From the NCBI RefSeq assembly GCF_006345805.1, contig NC_043017.1, forward strand, positions 18,786,001-18,850,000: a stretch of 64,000 nt of DNA, read 5' to 3'. A program made the translations under genes and the position numbers. The notes beneath the pieces are model-generated. The model was not told the origin of the DNA. It was given only the letters and a program-made list of their open reading frames with translations, and made no database searches. Each line of letters begins with the position of its first letter. The stretch's first letter is position 1. This DNA comes from Octopus sinensis. Its lineage: Eukaryota. This document shows positions 6,294-58,264 of this stretch, piece by piece.

Positions 6294-7817
6294 ATGGATG
6301 TTAAATTAGATGAGAAACAGGACCTGTGTGACACTCTCACTCAAAGTATTTGTGTCCCTGATGATAGAATGAAAAAGAAAGAAAAAGGGTTCTACCAATG
6401 TGATTTCTGTAAGAAGGCATTTGCTCAGAAGTGTTACCTAACTATTCACAAACGTATTCATACTGGAGAGAAACCATACCAATGTGATGTCTGCAGTAAA
6501 TCATTTCCTAGAAGAGATAACCTAACAATTCACAAACGAATTCATACAGGAGAGAAGCCATATCAGTGTGATATCTGCGGTAAATCATTCTCAGTAAATG
6601 GTTCTTTAATCAATCACAAACGAATTCATACAGGAGAGAAGCCATATCACTGTGATATCTGTGGGAAATTATTTTCTCAAAATGGTGACTTAACTCAGCA
6701 TAAACGCATTCATACAGGAGAGAAACGATATCACTGTGAGATATGTGGTAAATCATTCTATGAGAAGAGTGATGTAACTAAACATAAAGTTATTCATACA
6801 GGGGAGAAACGCTATCACTGTAATATCTGTGGGAAAGCATTTTCTGCAAGCAGTGGCTTAACTACTCACAAACGTATTCATACTGGAGATAAACCATACC
6901 ACTGTGATATTTGTGGTAAAGCATTCTCTAGAAGTGGTAACATTAATATTCACAAACGTATTCATACTGGAGAGAAGCCATATCGTTGTGATATCTGTGG
7001 TAAATCATTTTCTGTAAATTGTCAATTAACTAATCACAAACGTGTTCATACAGGTGAAAAACCTTATCACTGTGATGTCTGTGGTAAATCATTCTCTCAA
7101 CAAGGAGACTTAACTAAACATAAACGTATTCATACAGGAGAGAAACCCTATCAGTGTGATATCTGTGGTAAATCATTCTCTCAAAATGGTGACTTGACTA
7201 AGCACAAACGTATTCATACAGGGGAGAGGCCATATGACTGTGATGTCTGTAGAAAATCATTCTCTACAATTGGTGATTTGATTGCTCACAAACGTACTCA
7301 TACAGGAGAGAAGCCATATCACTGTGATATCTGTGGCAAAGCATTTTGTCAGCGTGGTGACTTAAATTCTCACAAACGTATTCATACAGGAGAGAAACCA
7401 TACCGATGTGATATCTGTGGCAAATCCTTTTGTGTAATTAGTCAATTAATTACCCACAAACGTATTCACACCGGAGAGAAACCATATTCCTGTGATATCT
7501 GCGGTAAATCCTTCTCTAAGAATGATACCTTAACTAAACATAAACACACTCATTCAGGAGAGAAACCATATCACTGTGATATCTGTGGTAAATCATTCTC
7601 TTTCAGTAGTAACTTAACTGTACACAATCATGTGCACACAGGAGAGAAGCCCTATTCCTGTGATATATGTGGGAATTCCTTTTCTAGAAATGATACTTTA
7701 ACTGTGCACAGACACACTCATACAGGAGAGAAGCCACACCACTGTGACATCTGTGGTAAATCCTTCTCCCAAAGAAGTCACTTATCCACACATAGAACTG
7801 TTCATATAAAACAGTGA
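6294..7817 (+). CDS. C2H2 zinc-finger protein ZNF-A, 507 aa, 17 fingers, no KRAB/SCAN/BTB domain
   Basis: 17 C-x2-C-x12-H-x3-H repeats with TGEKP linkers; intact ORF. Confidence 0.95.
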   Translation: MDVKLDEKQDLCDTLTQSICVPDDRMKKKEKGFYQCDFCKKAFAQKCYLTIHKRIHTGEKPYQCDVCSKSFPRRDNLTIHKRIHTGEKPYQCDICGKSFSVNGSLINHKRIHTGEKPYHCDICGKLFSQNGDLTQHKRIHTGEKRYHCEICGKSFYEKSDVTKHKVIHTGEKRYHCNICGKAFSASSGLTTHKRIHTGDKPYHCDICGKAFSRSGNINIHKRIHTGEKPYRCDICGKSFSVNCQLTNHKRVHTGEKPYHCDVCGKSFSQQGDLTKHKRIHTGEKPYQCDICGKSFSQNGDLTKHKRIHTGERPYDCDVCRKSFSTIGDLIAHKRTHTGEKPYHCDICGKAFCQRGDLNSHKRIHTGEKPYRCDICGKSFCVISQLITHKRIHTGEKPYSCDICGKSFSKNDTLTKHKHTHSGEKPYHCDICGKSFSFSSNLTVHNHVHTGEKPYSCDICGNSFSRNDTLTVHRHTHTGEKPHHCDICGKSFSQRSHLSTHRTVHIKQ

Positions 7818-7821
7818 CAGT

Positions 7822-7915
7822 ATCATCATCATCATTGTTTAACATCCGTTTTCCATGCTGGCATGGGTTGGACAGTTTGACTGGGGACTGGCATGCCAGG
7901 AGGCTGCACCAAAAT
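7822..7915 (-). mobile_element. RTE-tail SINE 3' end, a few nt after the ZNF-A stop
   Basis: ATCATCATCATCATTGTTTAACATCCGTTTTCCATGCTGGCATGGGTTGGAC. Confidence 0.8.
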
Positions 7916-7967
7916 CTGGGTTCCATTAACTCTTTAGCTTTCACATTCTATCAAAAAAGAAAAGGGT

Positions 7968-8098
7968 AAAGATCTCCTTCAATCATGAATGACCATGGGA
8001 TTACACCTAGAAAGTTGTCTGGGGCACAAGTCTTAGCAAGGTTGTTTATGGAAGACCAGTAGTTGCCCATGCATACCAGCTTCCACTCTCCATGCCAG
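7968..8098 (-). mobile_element. SINE family 3 fragment
   Basis: Reverse complement of 31090-31222. Confidence 0.6.
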
Positions 8099-10204: not shown

Positions 10205-11907
10205 ACCTAGTAAAGTGTGTCAGAGGATTTTGAATCTCCTCTGATAAAGAGATTTTTGATGCTGCAGTCAGCATGTTTAAGAACTACATCTTTATGCCAG
10301 GACCTAACACCTGCAAAAGGAAGAGCCACCGGGACGAAGTCAAACGTGTTATTCAAGGCCTCGATGTCAACAAGGGTCACGGCCCTGACGACATACACCC
10401 ACGGGTTATCAAAGCGTTGGCTCCAGTCATCTGCGAGCCCTTAACACGTCTATTCAATATGTCATTGGCAACGGGTGTTATACCTGCAGACTGGAGAACA
10501 GCGATAATCTGCCCAATTTTCAAGAAAGGGAGCCGCGAAGACCCGCTTAACTACCGACCGGTTTGCCTTACATCAATAATCAGCAAGATGTTCGAAACCA
10601 TCCTTAAGAAAAGTATGATGCTCCACCTCCAAAACACAGCCTCTATCTCTGATTCCCAACACGGCTTCATGCCGAAGAGATCATGCTTGACCAACTTACT
10701 GGTAATGGAAGAATTGGTGACGCGCATCCTCGATGATAGTGATGCTGTTGACATCGTTTTATTGGACTTTGCCAAAGCTTTTGACTTGGTAAACCACTGC
10801 CTATTACTTGTCAAGCTTCAAGCATACAGTTTCCATCCGGATATTGTACGATGGGTTGGTGCCTTCCTCTCAGATCGCTCCTTCCAAGTCCAAGTTAATG
10901 GTTCGCAGTCCGACGTCTCAAGTGTGAGCAGTGGTGTGCCTCAAGGTTCAGTGCTTGGGCCCTTGTTGTTCTTAGTCTTCATAAATGACTTGCCCGACGA
11001 CCTCACGCAACATACCCTTCTATTTGCCGACGATATCAAACTGGTCGCTCCTCGCGGTGATATAGAGGATCTTCGTCGATGCCTCCACCAAATTTGGAAG
11101 TGGTCTAACGAATGGGACCTGTGTCTGAACGTGTCAAAGTGCTGTCATCTGCCTCTTGGCTCTCCTCTTGCAACTCAACTTGATTTCGAGCCGGGTCGTC
11201 TGCTGCTGGAGAGGACCGATCAGGTAAAGGACCTGGGTAACTTGGTGGATTCCTCCTTTTCGCCTTCGGCCCAGTGCGTCCATGCTGCCAACAAAGCACG
11301 CGGAATTCTGTTCTTGATTCGACGGTCATTCGGAATGCTCACAGCAACCATATTCCTACCACTCTATGTCACGCTGGTGAGACCCATATTGGAGTACGGG
11401 ATTCAAGCCTCTTCTCCTTATCTCCTCAAAGACATACAGCATCTTGAAAGAGTCCAGAAGCTGGCTACCTGCATGGTTCATGGTCTCAAAAATTTATCCT
11501 ATGAAGAAAGGCTGAGGACGCTCGACCTTTATTCTCTTGAAAAACGCCGCCGCCATGGTGATCTCATTCTCACCCACAACATCATAAGCGGAAAGTGTAA
11601 CCTCTTGAAAGAGCTGTTCTTCACTCCTGCTCCAGAGAGTCAGCTGCGGGGTCATTCCGAAAAGCTCTACCTGCGACGATTTCATCTCAATCGAAGGAGA
11701 GGGGCTTTCTCCGTCCGGGTTGCGGATTCGTGGAACAAGCTGCCAGACGAGATGGTGAAGATGCCGACGACCGCTTTGTTCAAAGCCTCCCTTGACCTCA
11801 AGTGGCCTGAACTCTTTACATGAACACCACCCTGTACTTAACTCCATGTCCCCCTACATGGCCTTGCTATTTGCTTTTGAGCCAAATTAACTAACTAACT
11901 AACTAAT
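10205..11907 (+). mobile_element. CR1/L2-like LINE, 5'-truncated; intact 516-aa RT ORF (10273-11823) and (TAAC)n tail
   Basis: NYRPVCLTS, QHGFMPKRSCLTNL, LDFAKAFD, SGVPQGSVLGP, FADD, VRPILEY motifs; no endonuclease domain; TAACTAACTAACTAAC near 11888-11905. Confidence 0.93.
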
Positions 11908-17226: not shown

Positions 17227-18582
17227 TTACACTTCTATATGAATGCATACATGTGTAGTTAAGAAACGTTTCTGAGAGAATGATTTACCACAGATTTCAC
17301 AGCGATATGGCTTTTCTCTTTTATGAATGCGTTTGTGTTTAGTTAGGTCACAATTTTGAGAAAATGATTTATCACATATATCACAATGATACGGTTTCTC
17401 TCCTGTATGAATACGTTTGTGAGAAATTAATTCACCACTCTGACAAAATGACTTACCACATATATCACAATGATATGGTTTCTCTCCTGTATGAATACGT
17501 TTGTGTTTTGTTAAATCACCAGTTCTAGAGAATGATTTACCACAGATATCACACTGATATGGCCTCTCTCCTGTATGAATGCGTATGTGTTTAGTTAAGT
17601 CACTACTGCCGCAGAATGATTTACCACAGATATCACAATGATATGGCCTCTCGCCTGTATGAATGCGTTTGTGTTTAGTCAAGTCACCACTTCCAGAGAA
17701 TGATTTACCACAGACATCACAGTGATATGGTTTCTCTCCTGTATGAATACGTTTGTGCTTTGTCAAGTTAACACTTCCAGAGAATGATTTACCACAGATG
17801 TCACAGCAGAATGGCTTCTCTCCTGTATGAATGTATTTGTGTTTAGTTAAGTTACTACTCACACAGAATGATTTACCACAGATATCACAATGATATAGCT
17901 TCTCATTTGTATGAATACGTTTGTGTTTAGTTAAGTAACTTCCATCAGAAAATGATTTATCACAGATGTCACAGTGATGTGGCTTCTCCCCTGTATGAAT
18001 GCGCTTGTGTGTAGACAAGTGGTCGTTTCGAGAGAATGATTTTCCACAGATATCACAGTGATATGGCCTTTCACCTGTGTGAATATGTTTGTGTTTAGTT
18101 AAGTCATAATTTTGACAGAATGATTTCCCACAGATGTCACAGTGATATGGTTTCTCTCCTGTATGAATACGTCTGTGAGTAGTTAAGGCCCCATTTTCAG
18201 AGAATGATTTGCCACACATATCACAGTAATATGGCTTCTCTCCTGTATGAATGCGCTTATGTTTAGTTACAGCACTGGTCCCATAAGAGAATGATTTCCC
18301 ACAGATATCACAATGATATGGCTTCTCTCCTGTATGAGTGTACTTGTGTCTTGTTAAGTGACTGCTAGCATAAAATGACTGGCCACAGATGTTACAATGA
18401 TAGGATTTCTCTCCAGTATGAATACGTTTGTGAATATTTAGGTTATCTTTACGAGGAAACGACTTTTTACAGACATCACAGAGATATGGTTTTTTACCCT
18501 CCTTTTTTACGTCATCAGAAAAATCAATACTTTCAGACTCCGTTTCACATTTAACCTTGTTATCATATAATTCATTTTCCAT
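17227..18582 (-). CDS. C2H2 zinc-finger protein ZNF-B, 451 aa from first ATG (18582), 15 fingers
   Basis: 15 fingers (finger 3 has a 13-residue C-H spacer). ORF-track start at 18600 is GTG. Confidence 0.95.
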
Positions 18583-19135
18583 AATGTTTTCGTCTTTCAC
18601 TGTAGTATATACTTCAGGTCAATAAGATTACCCAAAAGTTCTGAGTTCAATCCCCACTAAATGCAGCAATTCAAAATCAACAGGGGGACACTTGACAGTC
18701 ATGATCTACACGGGCTGGATCCCTTCCAGTAACAAGAACCAATGGAACAAAATGCTTGATGGAAATTCTTCCTCTGAAGATGTCTACTGAAGCCTGCTCA
18801 TCCATTAATAAAATTCCACTTGCTATAGATGGTTTTCTTTAAATTGTTAGATTTCACTCCAAATAAATATTTCTTCTGCTATAATTCCATCAACTGTGAT
18901 CTTTGTTGATATTTGAAGATATTGCAAAGTCCTTTGTTATCCAATTTTAATTACAATATAAATTCATCTTCCACTCATTTCAGACAGTGAAACAGGGAAA
19001 TTTCACTGTTAATCTCAGTTCACAGCAAATATTTCACAGTAATTCTACAACAGAATTATATAAACAGGATTAAGTCTGTTCTGCATAATTTATTTTTGGT
19101 CTCCAAGTAACGAACTCAAGTAACTAATAATTCTT

Positions 19136-20260: not shown

Positions 20261-20687
20261 ACTACATCTCACCCAGAAATAACAAGAAAATCTCGATCAA
20301 TTCTCCAAGTTGTTGGTAAAATTTAAATTAGAGTCACTCTTACTACTTCCGGTTATCAGAAGTATGGAAATCCATACGTATCCGCGCTAATTAATACTTG
20401 CAACCTCGTTCATCACTGACTCATTCAACACTCATCCTGGATAACACGGCACGCTTAATTGTAAACCATGTTATGTTTATCAAGGACTGATATGTGAAAA
20501 TACAGGTCAGGGATCAGTCGAAGATTCTGCTTGCACCGCAAAAAAATAATAAAATAAACCAACCTTCCCCTCCAGCAACCATCCCGCTGATGCTCAGCTA
20601 CCCAGAATGCACTGATTATCACTTGTGTTTACATGACCGTGTTGTGAGGCTGTGTATTTTTTAATACGGATTTATATACAGGAACCT

Positions 20688-24649: not shown

Positions 24650-25660
24650 ATGGAAAGGAAATTATATGAGAACAAGTCTGAAACCCAATCTAAACAGATT
24701 AGTTTCCCTGGTGACATAAATGAAGAGAGAGAAAAAACATATCAATGTGATATCTGTAAGAAGACATTCTCTGTAAAATATAACCTAACTAGTCACAAAC
24801 GTATTCATACAGGAGAAAAACCGCACAAGTGTGACATCTGTGGTATATCATTCTGTAGGAGTAATGATTTAACCAAACACATACGTATTCATACAGGGGA
24901 GAAGCCATATCACTGTGATATCTGTGGTAAATCATTCTCTAGGAGTGATCAGTTAACAACTCACAAACATATTCATTCAGGAAACAAACCATATCAGTGC
25001 AGCATCTGTGGTAAATCATTCTCCTTAAGTGGTCACTTAAATCTTCACATACGGATTCATACAGGAGAGAAGCCATACCATTGTGATGTCTGTGGTAAAT
25101 CATTCTCTAGGAATGATCAATTAACTATTCACAAACGTAATCATACTGGAAACAAACCATATCACTGCAGTATCTGTGGTAAATCATTCATTATAAGTAG
25201 TCACTTAAATCAACACATACTTATTCATACAGAAGAGAAACCGTATCATTGTGAAATTTGTGGTAAATCATTCTCTGATAGAAGACATTTAACAGTGCAC
25301 AAACGTTTTCACACAGGAGAGAAACCATATCACTGTGATATCTGTGATAAATCATTCTATGTAAATAGTGCCTTAACTGCACACAGGCGTATTCATACAG
25401 GAGAGAAACCATATCACTGTGAGATCTGTGGTAAATCATTCTCTGTAAATAGTGCCTTAACTACTCACAAACGTATTCATACTGGAGAGAAGCCATATCA
25501 GTGCAGTATCTGTGGTAAATCATTCTCTGATGGAAGACATTTAAGAGTACATACACGTGTTCATACAGGAGAGAAGCCATATCACTGCAATGTCTGTGGT
25601 AAATCATTCTCTCAAAAATCGAACTTAACCACTCATACCATTACTCATGCCAAACAGTAA
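24650..25660 (+). CDS. C2H2 zinc-finger protein ZNF-C, 336 aa, 11 fingers
   Basis: 11 canonical fingers; intact ORF. Confidence 0.95.
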
Positions 25661-26635: not shown

Positions 26636-26639
26636 GGGA

Positions 26640-32826: not shown

Positions 32827-34011
32827 TTACTGTGGTGTGTGAATACCTAAGTGTTTAGTTAAACAGCCTTTTTGAAAGAATGATTTTCCACATATGTCAC
32901 AGAGATATGGCTTCTCTCCTGTATGAGAAAGTTTATGAATAGTTAATTCACTATTTTGAAGAAATGATTTACTGCAGATATCACACTGAAATGGTTTCTC
33001 TCCTGTATGAATATGTTTGTGAGCAGTTAAGTGACTGTTTTGAGCAAAGAATTTTCCACAGACATCACAGTGATGTGGTTTATCTCCAGTATGAATACGT
33101 GTATGTGTAGTTAAGTGATGCTTCACAGAAAATGACTTACTACACACATCGCACTCATATGGTTTCTCTCCTGTGTGAATACGTTTATGTATAGTTAAGA
33201 AGCTAGGTGCAGGGAATGATTTACTACAGATATCACAGTGATACAACTTCTCTCTTGTATGAGAACGTCTGTGTCTATTTAAAATTGTTGGTGCAGGAAA
33301 CGATTTTCCACAGATGTCACAATGATATGGCCTCTCCTTTGTATGAATATGTTTGTGTGTAGCTAAGACAGAACAATCAGAAAATAATCTACCACAGATA
33401 TTACAGTGATATGGTTTTTCTCCCGTATGAATACGTTTGTGCCTGCTTAAATCATCATTTTTAGCAAATGGTTTATCACAGATGTCGCACTGATATGGTT
33501 TCTCACCCGTATGAATGCGTTTGTGATTAGCTAGGCTACTTTTTTGAGAGAATGATTTACCACAGATATCACAGTGATACGGCTTTTCTCCTGTATGAAT
33601 GTGTTTGTGAGCAGTTAAGTCACAATTCCGACGAAATGATTTACCACAGATATCACACTGATATGGTTTCTCTCCTGTATGAATGAGTTTGTGACTTATT
33701 AGATCGCCTTTTCGACAAAATGATTTATCACAGATATCACATTGATATGGTTTCTCTCCTGTATGAATGCGTATGTGAATAGTTAAGTTCTGATTTTGAT
33801 TAAATGATTTACCACAGATATCACACTGATATTTTTTCTCTCCTGTGTGAATGCGTCTGTGTGTAGTTAATGTATGTTTATGAGAGAATAATTTATTACA
33901 GATATCACAGTGGTATGTTTTTCCTTTCTTTTTCTGTATATCCTCAGGGAAATCAATAACTTGAGACTCTGTTTCACATTTAATCTTTTTCTCACACAAT
34001 TTGTCTTCCAT
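32827..34011 (-). CDS. C2H2 zinc-finger protein ZNF-D, 394 aa from first ATG (34011), 13 fingers
   Basis: 13 fingers. Track start 34137 is TTG; acceptor and uORF MTLP* at 34371 to 34357. Confidence 0.93.
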
Positions 34012-35193: not shown

Positions 35194-36126
35194 TTACTGT
35201 TGTTTATGAATACCCAAGTGTTTAGTTAAGTAACCTTTTTGAGAGAATGATTTTCCACATATGTCACAGAGATATGGCTTCTCTCCTGTATGAGTACGTT
35301 TATGACGAGTTAATTCACTACTTTCAAGGAATGATTTACTGCAGATATCACATCGAAATGGTTTCTCTCCTGTATGAATACGTTTGTGAGCAGTTAAGTG
35401 ACTGTTTTGGGAGAAGAATTTTCCACAGACATCACAGCGATGTGGTTTATACCCAGTGTGAATACGTACATGAATCATTAAATGATGCTTCACAGAAAAT
35501 GATTTACCACAGATATTGCACTCGTATGGTTTCTCTCCTGTGTGAACACGTTTGTGTTTAGCTAAGATACTTGGTGAGGGGAATGATTTACAACAGATAT
35601 CACAGTGATATGGTTTCTCTCCTGTATGAACACGTTTGTGAATAGTTAAGATTCTTGGTGCAGGGAATGATTTACCACAGATATCACAATGATATGGCCT
35701 CTCACGTGTATGAATATGTTTGTGTCTGGATAAGCTAGAACTGTCTGAGAATGATTTACCACATATATCACAGTGATATGGTTTTTCTCCTGTATGAATA
35801 CGTTTGTGTTTAGTTAGGTTGCCATTTTCAGAGAATGATTTATCACAGATATCACAGTGGTATGGTTTATCCTTTGTATGAATGTGTTTGTGACTAATGA
35901 GGCTGCTTTTATGAGAGAGTGATTTGCCAGAGACGTCAGAATTACATGGTTTCCCTCTTGTATGAATGAGTTTGTGAGTTAAGCCACACTTTTGAGACAA
36001 TGATTTATTACAGATATCACAGTGGTATAACATTTTTCCTTTCTCTTTCTGTATATCCTCAGGGAAATCAATAACTTGAGACTCTGTTTCACATTTAATC
36101 TTTTTCTCACACAATTTGTCTTCCAT
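35194..36126 (-). CDS. C2H2 zinc-finger protein ZNF-E, 310 aa from first ATG (36126), 8 canonical plus 2 degenerate fingers; tandem paralogue of ZNF-D
   Basis: Finger 1 is one residue short; finger 2 has lost both Cys (CNSDVSGKS). Acceptor and uORF MTLA* at 36486 to 36472. Confidence 0.9.
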   Translation of the reverse strand: MEDKLCEKKIKCETESQVIDFPEDIQKEKGKMLYHCDICNKSLSQKCGLTHKLIHTRGKPCNSDVSGKSLSHKSSLISHKHIHTKDKPYHCDICDKSFSENGNLTKHKRIHTGEKPYHCDICGKSFSDSSSLSRHKHIHTRERPYHCDICGKSFPAPRILTIHKRVHTGEKPYHCDICCKSFPSPSILAKHKRVHTGEKPYECNICGKSFSVKHHLMIHVRIHTGYKPHRCDVCGKFFSQNSHLTAHKRIHTGEKPFRCDICSKSFLESSELTRHKRTHTGEKPYLCDICGKSFSQKGYLTKHLGIHKQQ

Positions 36127-39735: not shown

Positions 39736-40035
39736 TGTTTACTTTATTACCCAGTCATAACCAGGGTATGGTTATGGTTAGGGTGGGGGAAGGGTATCTT
39801 TTTTCTCATAAATAACTGACAAACTGATATGACACCGCATTGACAAACAACCGCAGAAATTGTATTCACCTCAATAGACGTCATTGATTGGTTGAAATTG
39901 CCGAAATGCAAGAAATTTAACAAGAAATAGCTTACAAACTACAGAATTTTCTCAAGAAAGCCAAGAGAAAAAGATGTTTTATGTAACACACTACCAGTAT
40001 ACGAAGTTTAAAAGTGTTTAGTTACAAAGAAATTT
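39735..40035 (+). repeat. Interspersed repeat (same family as 8100-8290)
   Basis: Shares ~140 bp with 8100-8250. Confidence 0.6.
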
Positions 40036-40781: not shown

Positions 40782-41897
40782 ATGGAAGACGAATTGTGTG
40801 AGAGAAAGATTAAATGTGAAGCAGAGTCTCAAGTTATAGATTTCCCTGACGATATACAGAAAGAGAAAGGAAAAACATTATATCAGTGTGATATCTGTAA
40901 GAAGTCATTCTCTCTAAAGTGTAACTTAACTACTCACAAACGCATTCATACAGGAGAGAAACCATATCACTGTGATATCTGTGATAAATCATTTTGCCAG
41001 AAAGCCCACCTAATTGGTCACAAACACATTCATACAAAAGATAAGCCATATCAGTGTGATATCTGTGGTAAATCGTTTCCTCAGAGTTGTAACTTAACTA
41101 CTCACATACGTACTCATACAGGGGAGAAGCCATATCAATGTGATATCTGTGGTAAATCATTCGCTCATAAAGGCAGCCTAGTTACTCACAAACACATTCA
41201 TACAAAAGATAAGCCATATCAGTGTGATATCTGTGATAAATCATTTCCTCGGAGTTGTGACTTAACTACTCACATACGCATTCACACAGGAGAGAAACCA
41301 TATCATTGTGATATCTGTGGTAAATCATTCTCTGAAGATAGTAACCTAACTAAGCACAAACGTATTCATACAGGTGAAAAGCCATATCACTGTGATATCT
41401 GTGGTAAATCATTCTCTGAGAGTTCTAGCTTATCCAGACACAAACATATTCATACGGGCGAGAGGCCATATCATTGTGACGTCTGTGGTAAGTCGTTTCC
41501 TGCAACAAGAATCCTAAATATACACAAACGTGTTCATACAGGAGAGAAGCCGTATCACTGTGATATTTGTGGTAAATCATTCCCTGCACCTAGTGTCTTG
41601 ACTATACATAAACGTGTTCATACAGGAGAGAAACCATACGAGTGCGATATCTGTGGGAAATCGTTTTCTGTGAAGCATCACTTAATGATTCACAAGCGTA
41701 TTCATACTGCAGATAAACCATATCACTGTGATGTTTGTGGAGCATTCTTCTCTCAAAACAGCCGCTTAACTGCTCACAAGTATATTCATACAGGAGAGAA
41801 ACCATTTCAGTGTGATGCCTGCAGTAAATCATTCTTTGAAAGTAGTGAATTAAGTCGTCATAAACGTACTCATACTAGAGAAAAGCCATATCACTGA
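40782..41897 (+). CDS. C2H2 zinc-finger protein ZNF-F, 371 aa, 12 fingers; 13th finger lost by deletion
   Basis: 12 fingers ending KPYH*. Acceptor AG at 40428-40429; uATG at 40438. Confidence 0.93.
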
Positions 41898-43034: not shown

Positions 43035-44975
43035 GTTCTGCTAGGTTCCTCACAGGTACAAGATTTTCTGGGCAGGGAACACTGACGGAGTCGGGGGTGT
43101 GGATATACTTCTTGTGGAGAAATGGGTTGATAAGGTAATCGAGGTAGAGTATGTGACAGAATACTAAGATTAGATTAGTGCTTCATCATGGGTTAGCAAC
43201 CATTATCTTGGCCTATACCCATCAACCAGGGCTATCCGATGGACAGAAAGACTGATTTTATGACACACCCTTGCAGAATACCTCGTTGATGAATGACAAG
43301 AACCTTCTCTTTGTGGCTGGTGACTTCAATGGACATGTTGGACAACATACAGGGTCTTCCATGGAGGCCACGGTTTTGGTTCCCGCAATGAGGAGGGAAC
43401 CAGGCTGCTGGAGTTCTGTGATACGAATGATGTTATAGTTTGCAATACTAACTTCAGTCACCTAGCCACCTACCGTTCTGGCAGACACACTAGCCAAATT
43501 GTCTACATCTTTGCCAAAAAAGGGAAAGATGGCTGCTTATAAATGCCAAAGCCTTCCCAGACGAAGAATGTAACCCACAACATAGACTGGTAGTTAGCGA
43601 CTTCAGGATCAGGGCTAAATGGATGCCCAGAAGACGACCAGCATGGAGAAGAAGGGTCTGGAAGCTTAAAGATCCTGGAAATGAACAGAGATTTAGAGAC
43701 ATATTACTCAAAGCCTTTGACAAAATAGAAGTGGATATAGCTTCACATGATGTGGAAGACAACTGGAGATTTCTACGGGACAATCTGCTGAGGGCCACTG
43801 ACCATATCTGTGGATGGTGCAAAGTTCCCTCTTGACCCAAAATAATGTGGTGGTGAAACGATGTTATTCACAGGGCTATTAGAGAAAAGAAGCAGGTTTG
43901 GAAGAACGGTAGTTGTAGGGAATTGTATCAGACTGCCAGAAGGGAAACTAGGAGACAGGTTTATTTAGCCAGAGGGGAAGCAGATAAGAAAAAATTTGTT
44001 TATGTTCTGCGCCGTGAGGACCAAAGACTTGAAGCATTTTGTGTTGTAAGACAGTGTGTGAAAGAGAATCGTGATGTAGGAGAGAAATGTGTCTGCATGG
44101 ATGATGATTCTCTTGCACTAAACGAGACTGCAAAAAGAGAGGTCTGGAGACTCCATTATGAAAGGTTGCTCAATAAAGAGAATGAATGGGAGAAAGAGAG
44201 TCTGCCGAATGCCGACCCAACAGAGGGACCAGCTATCTGAATTAAGAGTATGAAGACAGGAAAAGCCCCCAGCCCATCAGGAATCACCGCAGAGATGCTC
44301 AAAATATCTGGTGGTGTTGGCTATAGCCTAGTCACCCGTATAGTTAACCACGAAGGAGTCATACCCAGTGACTGGTGTAGCAGCACTATTCAACTGCTAC
44401 AAAGGTAAAAGTGATGCTTTAGATACAAATAATTACAGAGGTATTAAGTTATTGGATCAGGTAATGAAGGTCATGGAGAGGGTCATAGCCCAACTAATTA
44501 GGGAGAGAGTCAGTTTAGATGAGATGCTATATTTTTGGTAAGACAGCTGCAGGAGAAATACCTAGCCAAAGATAAACCTCTGTACCTGGCTTTCATTGAC
44601 ATGGAGAGAGCCTTTGATAGTCCCCCGATCCCTTATCAATGAGGAAACTAGGGATAGATGAATGGTTAGTGAAAGCTGTGCAAGTCATGTACAGGGACAC
44701 TGTCAGTAAGGTGAGGGTTGGCAATGAGTACAGTGAAGAATTCCGAGTGGAGGTAGGGGTCCACCAAGGTTCAGTCCTCAGCCCCCTCCTATTTATCATA
44801 GTTCTCAAGGCAATAACAGAGGTATTCAATACAGAATGCCCCTGGGAGCTTCTCTCGAATAATGACCTTGCTCTAATTTCTGAGTTATTATCAGAACTAG
44901 AGGAGAAATTTCAGGTGTAGAAGTAAGGATTAGAATCGAAGGGCCTTAGAGTCAATCTAGCTAAAACCAAAGGAA
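43035..44975 (+). mobile_element. RTE-clade LINE, endonuclease plus partial RT, heavily disrupted
   Basis: WRGGSARF, VAGDFNGHVG, HRLVVSDF, GKAP, NYRGIKLL, GVHQGSVLSPLLF in shifting frames. Confidence 0.88.
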
Positions 44976-45109
44976 TTACCTTGGATCTGTATTCTACTTG
45001 CATTTATTAGTGTCCATTTGTTGGATATAATTTACCAAATTTGTTTAAAAATGGGTGATTTATTGATATCAACCTGGATATTTTAATCCCTTTTTGTCTG
45101 TCTGTATGT

Positions 45110-45165
45110 ATGCATGTATGTACGTACGTACGTACGTTTGTATGTATGTGTATGTATGTATATGA
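45110..45165. repeat. (TATG/TACG)n microsatellite
   Basis: Direct reading. Confidence 0.85.
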
Positions 45166-45169
45166 TCTA

Positions 45170-46500
45170 TCGGCGATCTTACGGTCGATCTATCTAAAAC
45201 TGAACATCGTTTTAATTACCATAATCGTTTTTACGTCAAATGGAAATAATTATAAGCATACCAATGCAAGGATGGTACTAATTATTTAAGCGGTGTAAAG
45301 AAATAACAGGTACCTTCCTCACGGTGGTCAGTGTTATTATTCCTAATAAAAACGCAAACCTGAAATATTAGGGAAGGTCATTGTTGGATCATATCGACTC
45401 CAGCTTAACCCTAACCCTCCATATATAAAAAAAACAACACTTTCTTGAAATGTATCCGGTATTTATTCAGAAAGGAAGAAAGACAAAACTGATGTTGTTT
45501 GGATTTGAAGAGACGGAAGTAATATTGCGGAGAATTTTCTTCGCTGCTCAACGATTCTGCCAACTGAACAAATTTATTAAATATAGAGGTTAATTACTGG
45601 ATGATTGCTAATTAACTGCGGTAAGAAACAGCTACAGCAATCTTTATTATGTTGGTGTGGAAATATAAAGGAAGGTTTATTGTAAAATGTAAATGTGCCG
45701 TCCAGTCTGAATTGCGACAACTTGAATATATTGTGACATCTCCGTCATTGGCTCTGTATTAATATGTAAGTATTATTAATAGAAACAACACCTACATTGT
45801 ATAAATTCTGTCATTTTCCTACTGCACCTGTTTGTTTTGATGTGTTCAAAGAAAGTGAAGAAATTTTCCTAAAGTAACGATGTTGTCTTAATCCCCATAC
45901 GTGTCGGCTGTCATATATGTAATAGAAGTGAGTTGAAAAACTTGCTTTAGCTGACATTACTTATTGTTGTCTTAATACTTACAGTTTTCCTTTCCACTCT
46001 GCATTCCAATCATCGTTATTTCCCCATATCTTAATATTAATAAGAAAGAGAAAGTTTGTATTTTTTAGGTCACTTCTATACATTGTTTAGTCACCGTTTA
46101 CCTTTTTCTTAAGAAATAAACTTGACAACTTTTATTCTCAAATTTAAAGTGATTTTGATGTTGATTCTCAAAAATCGATGATAATTATCGATAGTCTAGC
46201 TAATAATTACAGCGGATAAAATTGATTCCCAATTAAAATGAAAGAAGAAGAAAAAAACAGACGTATTAAAAGTGTTAATAAAACTTTTCCAAAACTTTCA
46301 TTTAAAGAGCTAAATATATTTTTGTGCCTTATTCACAAACAGCAAATCTTGTAATCTCTATGAGATAGTTGTAGATTCCTCATGGATAAATACACAATCT
46401 ACTATGATATATGAGAAACAAGCAACAGAAATGTTATGTCAAACACTAACAAATGACTAAACATCAACTTTTTACTTTGATTCTTGTTTTTATTTGTGAT
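45170..46500 (+). promoter_or_regulatory. Upstream cassette (flank + A + B) of ZNF-G
   Basis: Most complete cassette copy; direct duplicate at 51120-52260. Confidence 0.65.
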
Positions 46501-46779
46501 TTCGTATTTGTTTTCTCATCCGTTAATATTATATTTAGTTTGTGTTACGTTGATTTCCTTTTGAGGAAATGAAGGATGTTTTAGCAACTTGGGTATTGAA
46601 CACGATTATCTTCATTCTCCTCTGTATAGTCTGACACAGCAAAGAAAAATCGGTGTTACTATAGTATGATATCCACCTTGCTTTTTGTGCCTACCGTAAG
46701 GCACTTTACCAAACAACCCACTTATGGCCTTCAGCACTTAATTCCATCCCATTTAGTTGTTCACAGTAGGACCATGCTA

Positions 46780-47440
46780 GCCAGAGACTTTTACAAAATA
46801 ATTTGAAGTGAAGATGAAGCAGTGTTCTGTTTGAGAGAGCACAGTCTTATTGACCCGGTAGAAAATGTACCTCTTTGTCATAAATGCAGAACACGAATGG
46901 AAGAAAAAAGAAAGATGGATAGAACAGGAGAATTCTGGCCAATATTGGGATGTCCGAAAAAAAGGTGCCAAGCATATCGCACAGTTCTGGAAGGAAATCA
47001 GTTTTTCCACTAATCCAATTTAAATGAGAATATTAATAGCAGATTGAGTGTGTGTGAAATTTCAGAACTAGTGTTCTATTTTATTCACGAAATTCCGAGG
47101 AGTACCACAGTAAACTTTACTGGAAAGTCGCCCAATACTATTACAGACTGATTTAATATGTGTCATGAAGTTTGTAGCACGATAATATTACACCAGACAA
47201 GGGGTCAAATGATTGGCACACAGGAAAATTCTATACAGGTTGTCTAAGGTCAGTTTGCTGGTCATCGTTGATTGTTGACTGGTGATCAACCTCCGAACTC
47301 AGAGGATTCTGATGCAGAACTTATAAATAAGAAGAACTATGGGGCATGCATAGATGGCCCCTGGGTTTATAGTCTGAAAAATGGGCTTGATTGTCTGTAC
47401 TTTTATATTCAATGAAGAGATGGGGACACACTCATGATAA
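46780..47440 (+). mobile_element. Merlin / IS1595(ISXO2)-like DNA transposase remnant
   Basis: CHKCRTRM...CPKKRC...VLEGNQFF; CHEVCS...RGQMIGTQENSIQV; KNYGACIDGPWVYSL...RDGDTLM. Stops and frameshifts present. Confidence 0.65.
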
Positions 47441-47920
47441 ACAATGACCTGTTCACTGCTTTTTTAAATGATATCAGATCAGTTTACTAACATTCAAATC
47501 AATATTTGAAGATTTTTTTATTTTGCATAATAAGATGTTAATGAGTTTTAATAAATTTTACACTACAGACTGTTTATTATGCTCCTTTCCTTTTGTAGAA
47601 TAAATGTTTAATGATTTTTAATATATTTCATACTACCAACAGTTGGTAGACATCCTACTATAGTAGAAAATGGGTGGTAGATATCATAGATTAGTAGCAC
47701 AATTTGGTAAAATATAAAGAGTTGGCATTTCCACCAGCTCAAAGATATTGATGCATGTTTTGTCAGCAGAAAAGAAAAACAAAAAGAACAGGTGGATGAG
47801 GTCCATTGACCTGGTAAAGGTTTCTATCTACAATTTCTCACTTTAGAAGAAATGTAAAATGTCCACTGTGGAATGTCTTTCATTTAAGTATCCTCGATAT
47901 TTTATATTTGGTTCTCTTTT

Positions 47921-47950
47921 ATTTCAGAATATCAGATGACATTGGCATAA
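47921..47950 (+). promoter_or_regulatory. Splice acceptor (AG 47926-47927) and micro-uORF MTLA* (47936-47950) of ZNF-G
   Basis: ATTTCAG|AATATCAGATGACATTGGCATAA. Confidence 0.75.
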
Positions 47951-48299
47951 AATGATATTATTTACCTGAGATCCATCAATATTTATCAACTTTTAAAAAC
48001 AAAAAGATGTCATACACAACAAATATGAACCCTCATCATATAAATCTATGGTAGAATTACTGTGGAATATTGGCTCTGAACAGAATTTTTATACAAAATG
48101 CTCTCAAATTCACAGACTGGAATTTGTATTATAATGATTTGATATTGAAATTGAAGCTGAATTACAAAGGAATTTGCAGCATCTTCGAATATTGACAAAA
48201 ATCACAGTTGATAGAAATATAGCCAAAGAAATAGGAATAAAATATATAAATAAAGTGTGGAAGAACTTTTATATTTATTGCGGCGAGAGAGAAACAAGA

Positions 48300-49400
48300 A
48301 TGGAAGACGAATTGTATGAGAAAAAGATTAAATGTGAAGCAGAGTCTCAAATTATCGATTTCCCTGAGGATATAAAGGAAGAGAAAGGAAAGACATTCTA
48401 TCAGTGTGATATATGCAAGAAATCATTCTCTCAAAAATGTAACTTAACTACTCACAAACGCATTCATACTGGAGAGAAACCATATCAGTGTGATATCTGT
48501 AGTAAATCATTTTCTCTAAAGCATCACTTAACTACACACAAACTTTTTCATACTGGAGAGAAACCATTTCACTGTGAAATCTGTGGTAAATCATTCTCTC
48601 AGAAAGGTAACTTAGCTAGACATACACGCTTTCACACAGGAGAGAGACCATATCAATGTGATGTCTGTGGTAAATCATTCTCTCTAAATAATCTCTTGGC
48701 TACACACAAGCAAATTCACACTGGAGAAAAACCATTTCACTGTGTTATTTGTGGCAAGTCATTTTCTCAAAGTGGTAACTTAACTACCCACATACGTACT
48801 CATACGGGAGAAAAGCCATATCACTGTGAAATTTGTGGTGAATCATTTTCTCAAAATGGCAACCTAATTACTCACAAACACATTCATACGAGAGATAAAA
48901 TCTATAATTGTGATATTTGTGGTAAACTATTTTCTGGACATGGCGAGTTAATAGAGCACAAGCATATCCATAGAGGAGAGAAACCATTTCATTGTGATAT
49001 CTGTAGTAAATCATTCTCTCTGAAGCATCACTTAGTTGCACACAAACTCTATCACACAGGAGAGAAGCCACATCACTGTGATATCTGTGATAAATCATTC
49101 TCTCAAAAAGGTTACCTCACTAGACACAGACGCTTTCATACAGGACAGAAGCCATTTCACTGTGATGTCTGTGGTAAATCCTTCTCTGCAAATCATCACT
49201 TAAGTACACACAAACAAATTCATACAGGAGAAAAACCTTATCTGTGTGAAATCTGTGGTAAACCATTTCCTCAAAATGTTAACTTAACAATTCACATACG
49301 CACTCATACGGGAAAGAAGCCATATCACTGTGATATCTGTGGTAAATCATTTGTTCAGCAAAGCAACTTGATTACTCACAAACAATCACACAAGAGATAA
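48300..49400 (+). CDS. C2H2 zinc-finger protein ZNF-G, 366 aa from first ATG (48300), 12 fingers
   Basis: 12 fingers. Track start 48174 is TTG. Confidence 0.94.
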
Positions 49401-55016: not shown

Positions 55017-55954
55017 AATACCACAATATAATTTAGTGTGGTATTATTATCAGTTCTGTAAGTGTGACACAGATGGTAATGTACTGAGCAGTAATTAATT
55101 TTATTGATTAATGAGGAACTTCAAATCCTACCAGTCAACCTCAACGTTGCATTTCATTTCACTATTGATCTATAGGAAATGTTTACTATGGACTACTGTT
55201 GCCCCAACACATTTGTATATGTATAGGTACAAATGATATGCAACAGAAATTTATGCGGGATTAAAAAAGGTCTCCAACTGACCTAGTTACACTAAAACCC
55301 AAGAAATGTAAGGGGCAGAGATGACAACATCCAAAATTTTCATTTGGTGAATTGAGCAAAACAACAAAGATATACACAGATAATGCCAAAACAAATTCAG
55401 AGGTGATGGCCTTTGTCTATGTGGGGTAAATGCCTTACCTATGAGTATCACACCCACTTCCAAAAACAAAAACGCTGATGAGAAATGTTCAGAGTATTTA
55501 TCAGTTCAACCTGAATCAGTTGCAATGCTAAGCCTCACCCTAGTTTTGTGTTTGTGCTTTAGGTGTTGGGGGTGATGTCATATAAACGTGCTGAATACAA
55601 GTTTAAACAGACACAAACACACATAGTTATAAGAAATAGGCATCAGTTATGTCTAGAATTTTCTCGATAAAATGGATTAAGCTAAAGACACTGATTATAT
55701 TTCTAGTTCTTCAACCAGTCACATAGTCTATTTGAACAGGAAACAGATTCAATGTGGTGACCACAATTTGTCTTAGTCACTCAGATAGCAAAATCAAATC
55801 TAGAATATTTCCTAAGATCTGTTGCAATAGTTCACTATTGTGCCTTTGCACCACATAAAAGGAAATGTCTAGATGATTTTTATGTTCATAACACATACTA
55901 TTAAAATAGCAATGGTATGAGTAAATATTGAATAAAAATTTTGAATTATACGCA

Positions 55955-56770
55955 TTAAAAAATTATTAGTTTCTTAAAAGGAATGCATGCTATGGGGAAA
56001 ATGAAGGCAGTTTTCAAATCAGCATGAAAAATATATTTTGATCCACCCAAACACAATTCTTTGACAGAAAAATTCCTTGATGAATAGAATGAACATTTTT
56101 TACAAAGTAAAAAACAAAAAGATTTCATTAATTAGCTTTATTTCTATTATTTAAATCACAAATCATTCTATTATTGAATATAGAATAAATAAAAAAAAGA
56201 ATTAAGAGAAGACCGATTCTACACATGTCAAACATTATCTTTGAAAGAACCTGTTTGTTGAAGACTCATTATTTTCATTAATTTGCTGGAGTATATACAT
56301 GAATGAATGTATAAAAGAGAAAGTGTATAAGACATCATACTTATAGCCCTATGTGGTATGATGAAATAATTTCTTTTATCATTTGCAATTTGTATTTCTA
56401 ACGTAGTAATTGTACAGTGATGTTGTCCCTAAATTATGAGAATAAATTTCTCAGTTATTTACCCATAATGTTCAATAAATTCATTATATCCTGTTTTCCC
56501 TCAGGAAATATGTTAGGTCCAATAAATATGAGCACTTTCTGAATTAATACTTTATTACACTTACCAGAATGGTACGTTATCTCATGAATATAGATATAGG
56601 TTGTGGTTATATAAAATATAGTTTTCAAAGACAGTTCTGTGTATCATCCTCTACTAACACATTTACAGTGAGGTATTTTTCACACCATATCTTCAAATAC
56701 TGACACAGTTACTATTCCAGTATGATTAAACAGATGTGTAGATAAGTGACATTTCTGAGTAAATCACTTA
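55955..56770. repeat. Downstream (3') region of ZNF-H, duplicated at ~62860-64000
   Basis: Collinear alignment by eye (ATTATTAGTTTCTTAAAA...GCTATGGGGAAAATGAAG...; AAACAGATGTG.AGATAAGTGACATTTCTGAG). Confidence 0.85.
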
Positions 56771-56878
56771 CCACTTATACCACAATCAAATGGCTTCCCT
56801 ACTGTGTGAATATGTTTGTTTTTAGTTAAGCTCCTTCTTAAAATGAATGATATACCACAGATATCAGTGATATGGATT
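56700..56878 (-). pseudogene. Two decayed fingers after the ZNF-H stop
   Basis: Minus: PYH*..DICGISF..LTKNKHIHTVGKPFDCGISGK*FTQKCHLSTHLFNHTG. Confidence 0.75.
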
Positions 56879-58264
56879 CTATGCTGTATGACTGCGTTTG
56901 TGTATAGTTAACTTATTTGATACTGTGAATGTTTTACCACAGATATTACAACTATATGGCTTCTTTCCTGTATGAATGTATTTGTGTCTAGTTAAATCAC
57001 TACTTTGAGAGAATGATTTACCACATATCTCACAGTGATATGGCTTCTCTCCTGTATGAGTCCGAATGTGAGTAGTTAACTCACGACGCTGAGAGAATGA
57101 TTTACCACAGATATCACAGTGATACGGCTTCTCACCTGTATGAGTATGAATGTGCACTGTTAATGCATCTCTACGTGAAAATGATTTACCACAGATATCA
57201 CAGTCATATGGCTTCTCACCTGTGTGAATGCGTTTGTGAGCAGTTAAATCACCACTGTGAGAGAATGGTCTACCACAAATGTCACAAAGATATGGTTTCT
57301 CACCTGTATGAATACGTTTGTGACTAGTTAAGTTACCTGGATCAGACAATGTTTTGCCACAGATATCACAGTGGTATGGCTTTTCTCCTGTATGAATACG
57401 CTTGTGAGTAATTAACTTACTTCTAACAGCAAATGATTTACCACAGATGTTACAGGGATATGGCTTTACTCCTGTATGAATATATTTGTGAGCAGTTAAG
57501 TGACTACTAATAGAGAATGATTTACCACAGACATCACACTGAAATGGCTTCTCCCCAGTATGAAAGCGTTTGTGTACTGTTAATTTACTAATCGAAGACA
57601 TTGATTTACCACAGATGTCACAGTGATATGGCTGTCCTCCTGTATGAATATATTTGTGTATATTCAAGTGACCACTTCGAGAGAATGATTTACCACAGAT
57701 ATCACAGTGATATGGCTTCTCTCCTGTATGAGAGCGTACATGATTAGTTAAGATGCAACTTTTAGAAAACGATTTTCCACAGATATCACACTCATATGGT
57801 TTCTTACCTGTATGAGTGCACTTATGTCGAATTAAGGGACCTTTCTGACTAAATGATTTACCACACGTATCACACTGATATGGTTTCTCTCTTGTATGAA
57901 TACGTTTGTGCCGAGTCAACACACTATTTCTCGAAAAAGATTTATCACAAACATCACAGTTAAATGGCTTTTCCCCAGTATGTATGCGTTTGTGTATAGT
58001 CAGTGCATTTTTGTTAGAGAGTGCTTTGCCACAGATATCACAATGATGTGCCTTGTCTCCTTTATGGATACTACTCTGAGCAGTTATGGGACTTTTTTCA
58101 TCGATTGACACATCAAACATATCACTGTGTGTAGATGTTCCTCCTTTGTCTTGCAGCATATTTTTAGGATAATCAAAGTCCTCAGACTCTGTTTTTATAT
58201 GAATCGGTTTCTCACATAACTCCCTTTTAATCACAACTTGTGTCTCATGTAATTCACGTTCCAT
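56879..58264 (-). CDS. C2H2 zinc-finger protein ZNF-H, 461 aa from first ATG (58264), 14 fingers plus one degenerate N-terminal finger
   Basis: 14 canonical fingers. Track start 58279 is GTG; acceptor and uATG near 58572-58590. Confidence 0.94.

What the first reader, a model, noticed from the sequence alone, without database searches (positions are those of the whole stretch)
6294..58264. Conserved ~33-aa N-terminal peptide with a SUMO-acceptor motif next to a SIM-like motif: candidate KRAB-independent effector module
Seen: the only non-finger part of these proteins is a short conserved peptide. [28 protein letters not shown]; D and [25 protein letters not shown]; [25 protein letters not shown]; [25 protein letters not shown]; H carries VIKRE and [12 protein letters not shown] (half-motif duplicated). 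C (NKSE...QISFP) and A (VKLD...SICVPDD) are more divergent. Established: psi-K-x-E with downstream acidic residues is the SUMO conjugation consensus; V/I-I-D-L with acidic flanks is the PIAS-type SUMO-interacting motif; SUMO-dependent SETDB1 recruitment silences transposons in Drosophila (Su(var)2-10 pathway) and in the vertebrate KRAB/KAP1 system. Inference: this may be the missing effector of the cephalopod ZNF expansion, letting a KRAB-less family recruit silencing machinery via SUMO.
Basis: partly seen in the sequence, partly recalled or inferred. Interest (0 to 1): 0.8.

Follow-up and report, generated by a model that had tools for sequence, protein, structure and literature searches.

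The report
Octopus zinc-finger N-terminal acidic peptide
Eight clustered Octopus sinensis zinc-finger genes begin with a short acidic peptide shared by one Octopus gene subfamily, but its best-conserved residues are not the proposed SUMO-attachment or SUMO-binding residues, so it is a real motif of unknown partner, not a demonstrated SUMO module.

Summary
All eight C2H2 zinc-finger ORFs in the window (Octopus sinensis, CM016879.1) start with the quoted 30-44 aa peptide, and nothing else lies outside the fingers. A profile of the peptide finds only Octopus zinc-finger proteins among 1.84 billion representatives, always at the N-terminus. Pfam and PDB give no match, and AlphaFold2 predicts disorder.

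Across 18 independent lineages the acceptor Lys is present in 10. Position +2 is Lys in 9 and Glu in 6. The first "SIM" hydrophobic position is among the least conserved columns. The conserved skeleton is M1, L5, C/Y6, V/I10, C12, I19, F21, P22.

A strict psi-K-x-E occurs in 7 of 18 lineages against 3.0 expected. This includes six of the eight window genes, so SUMOylation of that clade stays plausible but untested. A canonical V/I/L SIM occurs in 1 of 23 peptides.

The peptide-coding DNA is no better conserved than the roughly 350-nt non-coding leader upstream (dN/dS about 0.2-0.6). Another Octopus zinc-finger subfamily lacks the peptide.

Best reading: a lineage-specific, weakly constrained, disordered docking motif, analogous to fish FiNZ, with unknown partner.

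The parts
6294..6392 (+). Gene A N-terminal peptide MDVKLDEKQDLCDTLTQSICVPDDRMKKKEKGF. It is a decayed version with no psi-K-x-E and Val in place of Phe21.
   Evidence: The O. bimaculoides relative P0128 differs at 4 of these 33 residues but at only 1 of the next 31.
18487..18582 (-). Gene B N-terminal peptide [36 protein letters not shown] lies at 18544-18555 and SIDF at 18520-18531.
24650..24739 (+). Gene C N-terminal peptide [31 protein letters not shown] 2-aa deletion removes the psi residue, and Ser replaces Asp20.
33916..34011 (-). Gene D N-terminal peptide [36 protein letters not shown] lies at 33973-33984 and VIDF at 33949-33960.
36028..36126 (-). Gene E N-terminal peptide, with its first 27 residues identical to D. 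IKCE lies at 36088-36099 and VIDF at 36064-36075. The first two fingers downstream are decayed.
40782..40880 (+). Gene F N-terminal peptide [37 protein letters not shown] lies at 40809-40820 and VIDF at 40833-40844.
48300..48398 (+). Gene G N-terminal peptide [37 protein letters not shown] lies at 48327-48338, IIDF at 48351-48362, and a second IKEE at 48372-48383.
   Evidence: AlphaFold2 gives pLDDT 40-49 for residues 1-30.
58133..58264 (-). Gene H N-terminal peptide [44 protein letters not shown], with an 11-aa internal duplication. IKRE lies at 58220-58231 and IKTE at 58187-58198.
47928..48299 (+). Example of the conserved non-coding leader, here in gene G. A splice-acceptor-like TTTCAG is followed by AATATCAGATGACATTGGCATAA and about 350 nt up to the ATG. 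The same module starts at 5948 (A, +), 24301 (C, +), 40430 (F, +), 34379 (D, -), 36494 (E, -), 58580 (H, -) and about 19159 (B, -).

Best explanation
The peptide is a lineage-specific short linear motif at the N-terminus of one subfamily of Octopus C2H2 zinc-finger proteins. It sits in the same exon as the finger array, directly after a conserved non-coding leader of about 350 nt. It is acidic and intrinsically disordered.

Its selectively retained part is a hydrophobic skeleton in an acidic background: M-E-x-E-L-[C/Y]-E-x-x-[V/I]-x-C-x-[T/S]-x-S-x-x-[I/V/T]-D-F-P-[D/E]-[D/E].

Inferred, not shown: this skeleton docks a nuclear co-regulator. A co-repressor is the more likely partner, by analogy with KRAB and FiNZ. 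Binding would go through L5/C6 and I19/F21/P22 by strand addition or hydrophobic insertion, with the acidic residues steering.

In one clade, which includes six of the eight genes here, Lys11 happens to lie in a psi-K-x-E context and may additionally be SUMOylated. That is a clade-level add-on, not the conserved function.

Constraint on the peptide is weak, and members such as A, and L007 in O. vulgaris, have let it decay.
For: - The peptide is present in all 8 ORFs.
- 23 peptides from three Octopus species and one unnamed sample align almost without gaps: one 2-aa deletion in C, one 4-aa deletion in P0130, and an 11-aa duplication in H.
- The profile hits are confined to Octopus zinc-finger N-termini.
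- Conservation is position-specific. The top columns are M1, L5, F21, V/I10, C12, P22 and C/Y6, while columns 3, 9, 17 and 18 are free. Uniform drift would not give this pattern.
- dN/dS is below 1 between distant paralogs: 0.2-0.4 for B against D-G, and 0.3-0.55 for C.
- There is no Pfam or PDB match.
- AlphaFold2 gives pLDDT 40-49 with no secondary structure for residues 1-30, against 86-92 for the fingers.
- FiNZ is a published precedent for a 28-aa Glu-rich N-terminal zinc-finger-associated sequence with an unknown partner (PMC10547256).
Against: - No functional data exist.
- The peptide-coding DNA is no better conserved than the non-coding leader: 60-72% against 68-75% for old paralogs, and 90-97% for both among D-G.
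- Codon positions 1, 2 and 3 show 0.61, 0.70 and 0.60 mean pairwise identity, so protein-level constraint is modest.
- Its dN (0.24-0.54) exceeds that of fingers 1-2 (0.12-0.27).
- A and L007 keep long finger ORFs with a decayed peptide.
- The sample is small, 18 lineages, and was gathered through searches that used the peptide itself.
- Low pLDDT with a 9-sequence alignment is weak evidence.
- No partner motif could be named.
Confidence: 0.5

Rival explanations
1. Lys11 in psi-K-x-E is SUMOylated and the adjacent V/I-I-D-F plus acidic tail binds SUMO. Together they form a SUMO-dependent silencing module that replaces KRAB.
For: - Strict psi-K-x-E followed by acidic residues is present in B, D, E, F, G and H.
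- It occurs in 7 of 18 lineages against 3.0 expected from within-peptide shuffles (nominal P = 0.02, not corrected for phylogeny).
- Short psi-K-x-E tiles are necessary in 149 of 166 human repression domains that carry them, and a 10-aa IKEE tile is sufficient (10.1101/2022.08.26.505496).
- Sp3 IKEE SUMOylation silences genes in vivo (PMC2978682).
- SIMs are loosely defined and are often disordered with acidic flanks (PMC12751080).
Against: - The Lys11 column is Lys in 10 of 18 lineages and ranks 28th of 33.
- Column 13 is Lys in 9 and Glu in 6, and ranks 31st.
- Column 18 is Arg, Ser, Gln and others, and ranks 25th.
- Only 5 of 18 lineages have the motif at the homologous register.
- A canonical V/I/L SIM core occurs in 1 of 23 peptides against 3.9 expected. 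With Phe allowed it is 7 of 23 against 5.2.
- psi-K-x-E is also found in 12.3% of inactive human tiles (10.1101/2022.08.26.505496).
- The peptide is missing from other Octopus zinc-finger subfamilies.
Confidence: 0.2
2. The peptide has no function of its own. It is carried along with the conserved leader and start-codon region, which are kept similar by nucleotide-level constraint or by gene conversion of the 5' module. It stays in frame only because a frameshift would destroy the finger array.
For: - The leader and the peptide DNA are equally conserved.
- Among D-G the 5' module is 90-97% identical, while fingers 1-2 show dS of 0.38-0.66.
- Third codon positions are as conserved as first positions.
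- The leader blocks are conserved across chromosomes and species.
- The peptide has decayed in A and L007, which keep intact finger ORFs.
Against: - The column-specific pattern, with L5 in 17 of 18, F21 in 14 of 18 and C12 in 12 of 18 next to free columns, is hard to get from nucleotide-level constraint.
- dN/dS is 0.2-0.55 for B and C against D-G.
- Conservative replacements occur at the key columns (V/I at 10; C/Y/W/F at 6; D/E at 23-24).
Confidence: 0.2
3. The peptide is a minimal acidic activation domain, with bulky hydrophobic residues set among Asp and Glu, that contacts a co-activator instead of a silencer.
For: - In G the composition is 11 acidic and 6 basic residues, with L, Y, I and F interspersed.
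- Residues 1-30 are predicted disordered.
Against: - The peptide is also Lys-rich.
- KRAB and FiNZ are Glu-rich too, and are repressive or repression-linked (PMC10547256).
- No predictor or assay was available here.
Confidence: 0.1

Closest known systems
[quoted passage not shown]
   Same: Both are short (28 aa against about 25-33 aa), Glu-rich and lineage-restricted. Both sit at the extreme N-terminus of a large, tandemly amplified, KRAB-less C2H2 family, match no known domain, and have an unknown partner.
   Different: FiNZ lies on its own exon upstream of the finger exon. The Octopus peptide is in the finger exon, behind a non-coding leader. Sequence similarity to FiNZ could not be tested, because no FiNZ model or sequence is held in the tools. 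The two are in different phyla, so any likeness would be convergent.
SUMO-consensus repression motifs (psi-K-x-E, e.g. Sp3 and MGA IKEE; synergy-control type)
   Same: B, D-G and H carry I/V-K-x-E in an acidic, disordered context, at a size that is sufficient for repression in human tethering screens (10.1101/2022.08.26.505496; PMC2978682).
   Different: In known cases the Lys and Glu are the essential residues. Here they are among the least conserved columns of the family.
SUMO-interacting motif (PIAS-type V-I-D-L-T with acidic tail)
   Same: D-G have V/I-I-D-F followed by P-E/D-D, which is two aliphatic residues plus an acidic flank.
   Different: The fourth core residue is Phe, not V/I/L. 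The first core position is polar or charged in most lineages. The family-wide core is x-[I/V/T]-D-F-P, with only two hydrophobic residues (definition in PMC12751080).
KRAB domain of tetrapod KZFPs
   Same: Both are N-terminal, acidic and attached to rapidly diversifying finger arrays in clusters that are interleaved with transposons.
   Different: KRAB is a domain of about 40-75 aa on separate exons that binds TRIM28. The peptide gives no hmmscan match to PF01352 or to any other Pfam model at E<=1, and no fold is predicted for it.

Membership tests
SUMO acceptor consensus (psi-K-x-E, acidic-downstream type) | A large hydrophobic residue, then Lys, then any residue, then Glu | tested here: met
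   Met in B (VKCE), D-G (IKCE) and H (IKRE, IKTE). Not met in A or C.
SUMO acceptor consensus (psi-K-x-E, acidic-downstream type) | If the site is the conserved function, its Lys and Glu should be retained across the family at least as well as neighbouring residues | tested here: not met
   Lys11 is present in 10 of 18 lineages (rank 28 of 33). Column 13 is Lys in 9 and Glu in 6 (rank 31 of 33). The motif sits at the homologous register in 5 of 18 lineages.
SUMO acceptor consensus (psi-K-x-E, acidic-downstream type) | UBC9-dependent covalent modification of the Lys | not testable with these tools
   This needs in vitro or in-cell SUMOylation assays.
SUMO-interacting motif | A four-residue core with at least three hydrophobic residues, typically V, I or L (PMC12751080) | tested here: not met
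   A V/I/L-only core occurs in 1 of 23 peptides, in H's duplicated segment, against 3.9 expected. With Phe allowed it is 7 of 23 against 5.2, of which five are D-G plus P0122.
SUMO-interacting motif | An acidic or phosphorylatable flank next to the core | tested here: met
   Columns 23-24 are Asp or Glu in 14 and 13 of 18 lineages.
SUMO-interacting motif | Non-covalent binding to the SUMO groove | not testable with these tools
   This needs a pull-down or NMR. Only single-chain structure prediction was available.
KRAB / SCAN / ZAD / BTB zinc-finger-associated domains | A match to the Pfam model | tested here: not met
   hmmscan of the N-terminal peptides of G, B and H at E<=1 returned 0 families. 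Full-length G hit almost only zinc-finger models and no KRAB, SCAN, ZAD or BTB model.
FiNZ | A short Glu-rich sequence at the extreme N-terminus of a KRAB-less, amplified ZNF family | tested here: met
   compared with the description in PMC10547256.
FiNZ | Encoded on its own exon upstream of the finger exon | tested here: not met
   The peptide and the fingers form one ORF, and the nearest acceptor-like site is about 350 nt upstream of the ATG.
FiNZ | Sequence similarity to the FiNZ consensus, and restriction to cyprinids | not testable with these tools
   No FiNZ sequence or model was available. The taxon differs, so homology is not expected.
CtBP-binding PxDLS motif | Pro (or Gly) at position 1 and Leu at position 4 (refined as PL[DN]Lx in 10.1101/2022.08.26.505496) | tested here: not met
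   The position equivalent to Pro (column 18) is never Pro in any of the 23 peptides. Position 4 is Phe in 14 of 18 lineages. One partial relative, P0023, reads RIDLSDD.

The most novel reading that the evidence does not exclude
The Octopus ME-x-EL-C-E...C...IDFP[D/E][D/E] peptide is an independently evolved effector motif of a KRAB-less zinc-finger subfamily, a molluscan counterpart of KRAB and FiNZ. It would recruit chromatin-silencing machinery through its hydrophobic skeleton, and a clade that includes this cluster would have layered a SUMO-acceptor site on top. The equally conserved leader with its mini upstream ORF would be a shared post-transcriptional control of the whole subfamily.
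Probability: 0.25. Interest if true: 0.7.

Novelty: new variant of a known kind. Interest (0 to 1): 0.45.

Why it matters
Octopus genomes hold one of the largest C2H2 zinc-finger expansions known, and how these KRAB-less proteins act on chromatin is an open question. The two papers I could read on the subject (PMC10547256, PMC12513265) describe no effector or N-terminal motif for them.

A defined 25-33 aa motif with a clear conserved skeleton gives a concrete handle for tethering assays, point mutants and partner pull-downs. It also marks out one subfamily for evolutionary analysis.

Showing that the SUMO and SIM residues are not the conserved ones redirects mutagenesis to L5/C6, V10/C12 and I19/F21/P22. 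It also warns against reading psi-K-x-E in Lys/Glu-rich peptides as functional by default.

Tried and rejected
**Searches that gave little**
- The first homolog search, with a 43-aa profile, returned only 22 candidates. In both completed searches no listed hit was longer than about 1.75 times the query, so candidates appear to be filtered by length.
- A search with 18 peptide variants joined into one 599-aa query returned only P0122, probably because of composition correction.
- The search with an 89-aa profile was dominated by finger similarity. About 10 of its 120 listed proteins carry the peptide.
- The profile search of PDB sequences gave no match at E<=10.
- Rfam and tRNA scans of the window found nothing.
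- No paper in the library mentions run SRR11869394, so the species of L009 stays unknown.

**Ideas rejected**
- A hidden upstream coding exon supplying a real domain. All three frames close within about 40 nt of the acceptor-like site. The in-frame extension seen in D, E and G is broken in F and L009, and stops lie just upstream in A, B, C, F and H.
- A vestigial KRAB A-box (VTFxDV against IDFPED). There is no hmmscan signal.
- A CtBP PxDLS motif. There is no Pro at position 1.
- A zinc-binding role for C6 and C12. Position 6 is C, Y, W, F, R or D, and position 12 is C, S, Y or I.


Full report
**Source and anatomy**

The window is from Octopus sinensis assembly GCA_006345805.1, chromosome record CM016879.1, at about 18.8 Mb. 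Protein F is encoded there exactly, and proteins on the same assembly are named O. sinensis.

Eight C2H2 zinc-finger ORFs lie on both strands. Their start codons are:

| Gene | ATG | Strand |
|---|---|---|
| A | 6294 | + |
| B | 18582 | - |
| C | 24650 | + |
| D | 34011 | - |
| E | 36126 | - |
| F | 40782 | + |
| G | 48300 | + |
| H | 58264 | - |

They carry 8-17 regular fingers, and the first finger begins 30-36 residues after the Met. H has an 11-aa internal duplication (20 of 33 nt identical) and one decayed finger. E has two decayed fingers.

Transposon ORFs lie between the genes:
- a reverse transcriptase at 10273-11823;
- a pogo/Tc5-type DDE transposase at 20652-22580;
- a reverse transcriptase plus PHD fragment at 26615-27451.

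**Gene structure**

All eight genes share a 5' module. A polypyrimidine tract and TTTCAG are followed by AA(T/C)ATCAGATGACATTGG... and a leader of about 316-372 nt up to the ATG. In B the leader is about 577 nt because of a roughly 230-nt insertion.

All three frames close soon after the acceptor-like site. The in-frame upstream extension seen in D, E and G is interrupted in F and in the relative L009. In-frame stops lie within a few codons of the ATG in A, B, C, F and H. RefSeq proteins of relatives begin at the homologous Met.

The peptide is therefore the real N-terminus. It is encoded in the finger exon, and no hidden upstream domain exists.

**Is it a family feature?**

A profile of 11 peptides (33 positions) was scored against 1.84 billion representative proteins. 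It gave 15 hits at E<=1e-3. One is an unrelated repeat protein (P0127). The other 14 are zinc-finger proteins or fragments matched within 8 residues of their start.

All named hits are O. sinensis, O. bimaculoides or O. vulgaris. One hit comes from an unnamed sequencing run (L009) and carries a homologous leader. No squid, cuttlefish or Nautilus protein appeared. Clustering of the library at 50% identity limits this negative result.

Loci fetched around other Octopus zinc-finger proteins gave mixed results:
- Further members appear on other chromosomes and in O. vulgaris (L002, L003, L004, L005, L006, L007).
- Loci L008, L010 and L011 carry another subfamily. L010 and L011 start MN[K/H]LT... 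and L008 shows a similar MNNL[S/T]... segment. They have neither the peptide nor the leader.

The peptide therefore marks one Octopus subfamily, not the whole cephalopod expansion.

**Which residues are conserved?**

Twenty-three peptides align almost without gaps. Close copies were collapsed to 18 lineage representatives, and columns were scored against the family's own composition.
- The best-conserved columns are M1, L5 (17 of 18), F21 (14 of 18), V/I10 (16 of 18), C12 (12 of 18), P22 (11 of 18) and C/Y6.
- The proposed acceptor Lys11 is Lys in 10 of 18 and ranks 28th of 33.
- The +2 position is Lys in 9 and Glu in 6, and ranks 31st.
- The first residue of 'VIDF' is Arg, Ser, Gln and others, and ranks 25th.

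Motif counts were compared with within-peptide shuffles:

| Motif | Observed | Expected from shuffles |
|---|---|---|
| Strict psi-K-x-E, anywhere in the peptide | 7 of 18 lineages | 3.0 (nominal P = 0.02, no phylogenetic correction) |
| Strict psi-K-x-E, at the homologous register | 5 of 18 lineages | not computed |
| V/I/L-type SIM core (definition from PMC12751080) | 1 of 23 peptides | 3.9 |
| SIM core with Phe allowed | 7 of 23 peptides (five are D-G plus P0122) | 5.2 |

The conserved signature is M-E-x-E-L-[C/Y]-E-x-x-[V/I]-x-C-x-[T/S]-x-S-x-x-[I/V/T]-D-F-P-[D/E]-[D/E].

**How strong is the constraint?**

| Comparison | Leader identity | Peptide-coding identity | First three fingers |
|---|---|---|---|
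| Among D-G | 90-97% | 90-97% | 76-81% |
| A, C, H against the others | 68-75% | 60-72% | 69-81% |

- Nei-Gojobori dN/dS of the peptide is 0.2-0.4 for B against D-G, 0.3-0.55 for C and 0.5-1.4 for A. Only about 16 synonymous sites are available.
- Mean pairwise identity at codon positions 1, 2 and 3 is 0.61, 0.70 and 0.60.
- For fingers 1-2 of old paralogs, dS is 0.65-1.3 and dN is 0.12-0.27. The peptide's dN is 0.24-0.54.

The peptide therefore evolves more slowly than synonymous sites. It evolves at least as fast as the non-coding leader, and faster than the fingers at the protein level. Constraint is real but weak, and it is concentrated in a few columns. A has let the motif decay, and so has L007, whose original ATG now reads ATA.

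**Structure and known families**

hmmscan of the peptides against Pfam at E<=1 gives nothing, and the profile finds no PDB sequence at E<=10. AlphaFold2 on G residues 1-89 with a 9-sequence alignment gives pLDDT 40-49 and no secondary structure for residues 1-30, against 86-92 for the fingers. This fits a disordered linear motif. The alignment is shallow, so the evidence is weak.

**Literature**

- Wells et al. 2023 (PMC10547256) describe FiNZ, a 28-aa Glu-rich N-terminal sequence of cyprinid zinc-finger genes with an unknown mechanism. They treat octopus zinc-finger genes only as ORFs predicted to bind transposons.
- The 2025 paper on cephalopod C2H2 expansions (PMC12513265) contains no mention of N-terminal, motif, effector or SUMO.
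- No paper in the library links octopus zinc fingers to SUMO.
- Short SUMO-site repression domains are well established in human factors (10.1101/2022.08.26.505496). psi-K-x-E is needed in 149 of 166 repression domains that carry it, a 10-aa IKEE tile is sufficient, and 12.3% of inactive tiles also carry the motif.
- Sp3 IKEE SUMOylation silences genes in vivo (PMC2978682, abstract).

What is unproven is that it applies here.

**Conclusion**

Shown:
- The N-terminal peptide is real and restricted, as far as sampled, to Octopus.
- It has a defined conserved skeleton.
- It is predicted to be disordered.
- It is encoded with the fingers, behind a conserved leader.

Inferred:
- It is a docking motif for a nuclear co-regulator (confidence about 0.5).
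- SUMOylation of Lys11 is possible in the clade that includes B, D-G and H (about 0.2).
- Hitch-hiking with the conserved 5' module (about 0.2) and an acidic activation role (about 0.1) remain open.

The claim that this is the missing effector of the cephalopod expansion is not supported.

Noticed in passing
window 5948, 24301, 40430, 47928 (+); 34379, 36494, 58580, ~19159 (-); also L002, L006 ~9688, L007 ~3697 (-), L009 ~390: Every gene of this subfamily has a splice-acceptor-like TTTCAG followed by a nearly invariant AATATCAGATGACATTGGCATAA and a leader of about 350 nt with further conserved blocks. These blocks are kept across chromosomes and species at least as well as the peptide-coding DNA. 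The first ATG opens a 4-codon mini-ORF (MTLA*) whose stop is lost in C, F, H and L009. The leaders hold 3-8 upstream ATGs.
   Followed up: partly
window about 18625-18850 (-), in the leader of gene B: An insertion of about 230 nt, absent from the other seven leaders, lengthens B's leader to about 577 nt. ARAGORN and Rfam found nothing there, and the element was not identified.
   Followed up: partly
genes D, E, F, G (window 32827-49400): The leader plus peptide are 90-97% identical among these four genes, but fingers 1-2 show dS of 0.38-0.66 and fingers 1-3 only 76-81% identity. This suggests gene conversion of the 5' module, or turnover and shuffling of fingers.
   Followed up: partly
L008, L010, L011 (O. 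sinensis CM016886, CM016873, CM016885): A second Octopus zinc-finger subfamily has a different short N-terminus (MNKLTEAKNDD..., MNHLTKRKNPD..., with a similar MNNL[S/T] segment in L008). It lacks both the ME-x-EL...IDFP peptide and the conserved leader. L011 holds a run of long, partly frameshifted finger arrays.
   Followed up: no
L007 (O. vulgaris OX597834) about 3300-3700 (-): A relative whose original start codon reads ATA (ATAGAAAATGAATTATGTAAG). The 11-finger ORF then starts downstream and keeps only the second half of the motif (QSKRIEFSDE).
   Followed up: no
window 20652-22580 (+); 10273-11823 (+); 26615-27451 (-): There is an apparently intact 642-aa pogo/Tc5-type transposase (CENP-B N, HTH_Tnp_Tc5 and DDE_1 domains). 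Two reverse-transcriptase ORFs, one with a PHD finger, also lie between the zinc-finger genes.
   Followed up: partly
P0045 (Cyprinodon variegatus protein): A fish KRAB-less zinc-finger protein in the hit list has an acidic N-terminal region with VKEE and IKEE. psi-K-x-E in acidic zinc-finger N-termini may therefore recur in unrelated lineages.
   Followed up: no
window 40782-41897 (+), gene F: F's ORF ends right after a linker (...REKPYH*). The assembly also carries a 394-aa gene call from the same ATG that runs on beyond the locus, so an alternative spliced 3' end is possible.
   Followed up: no
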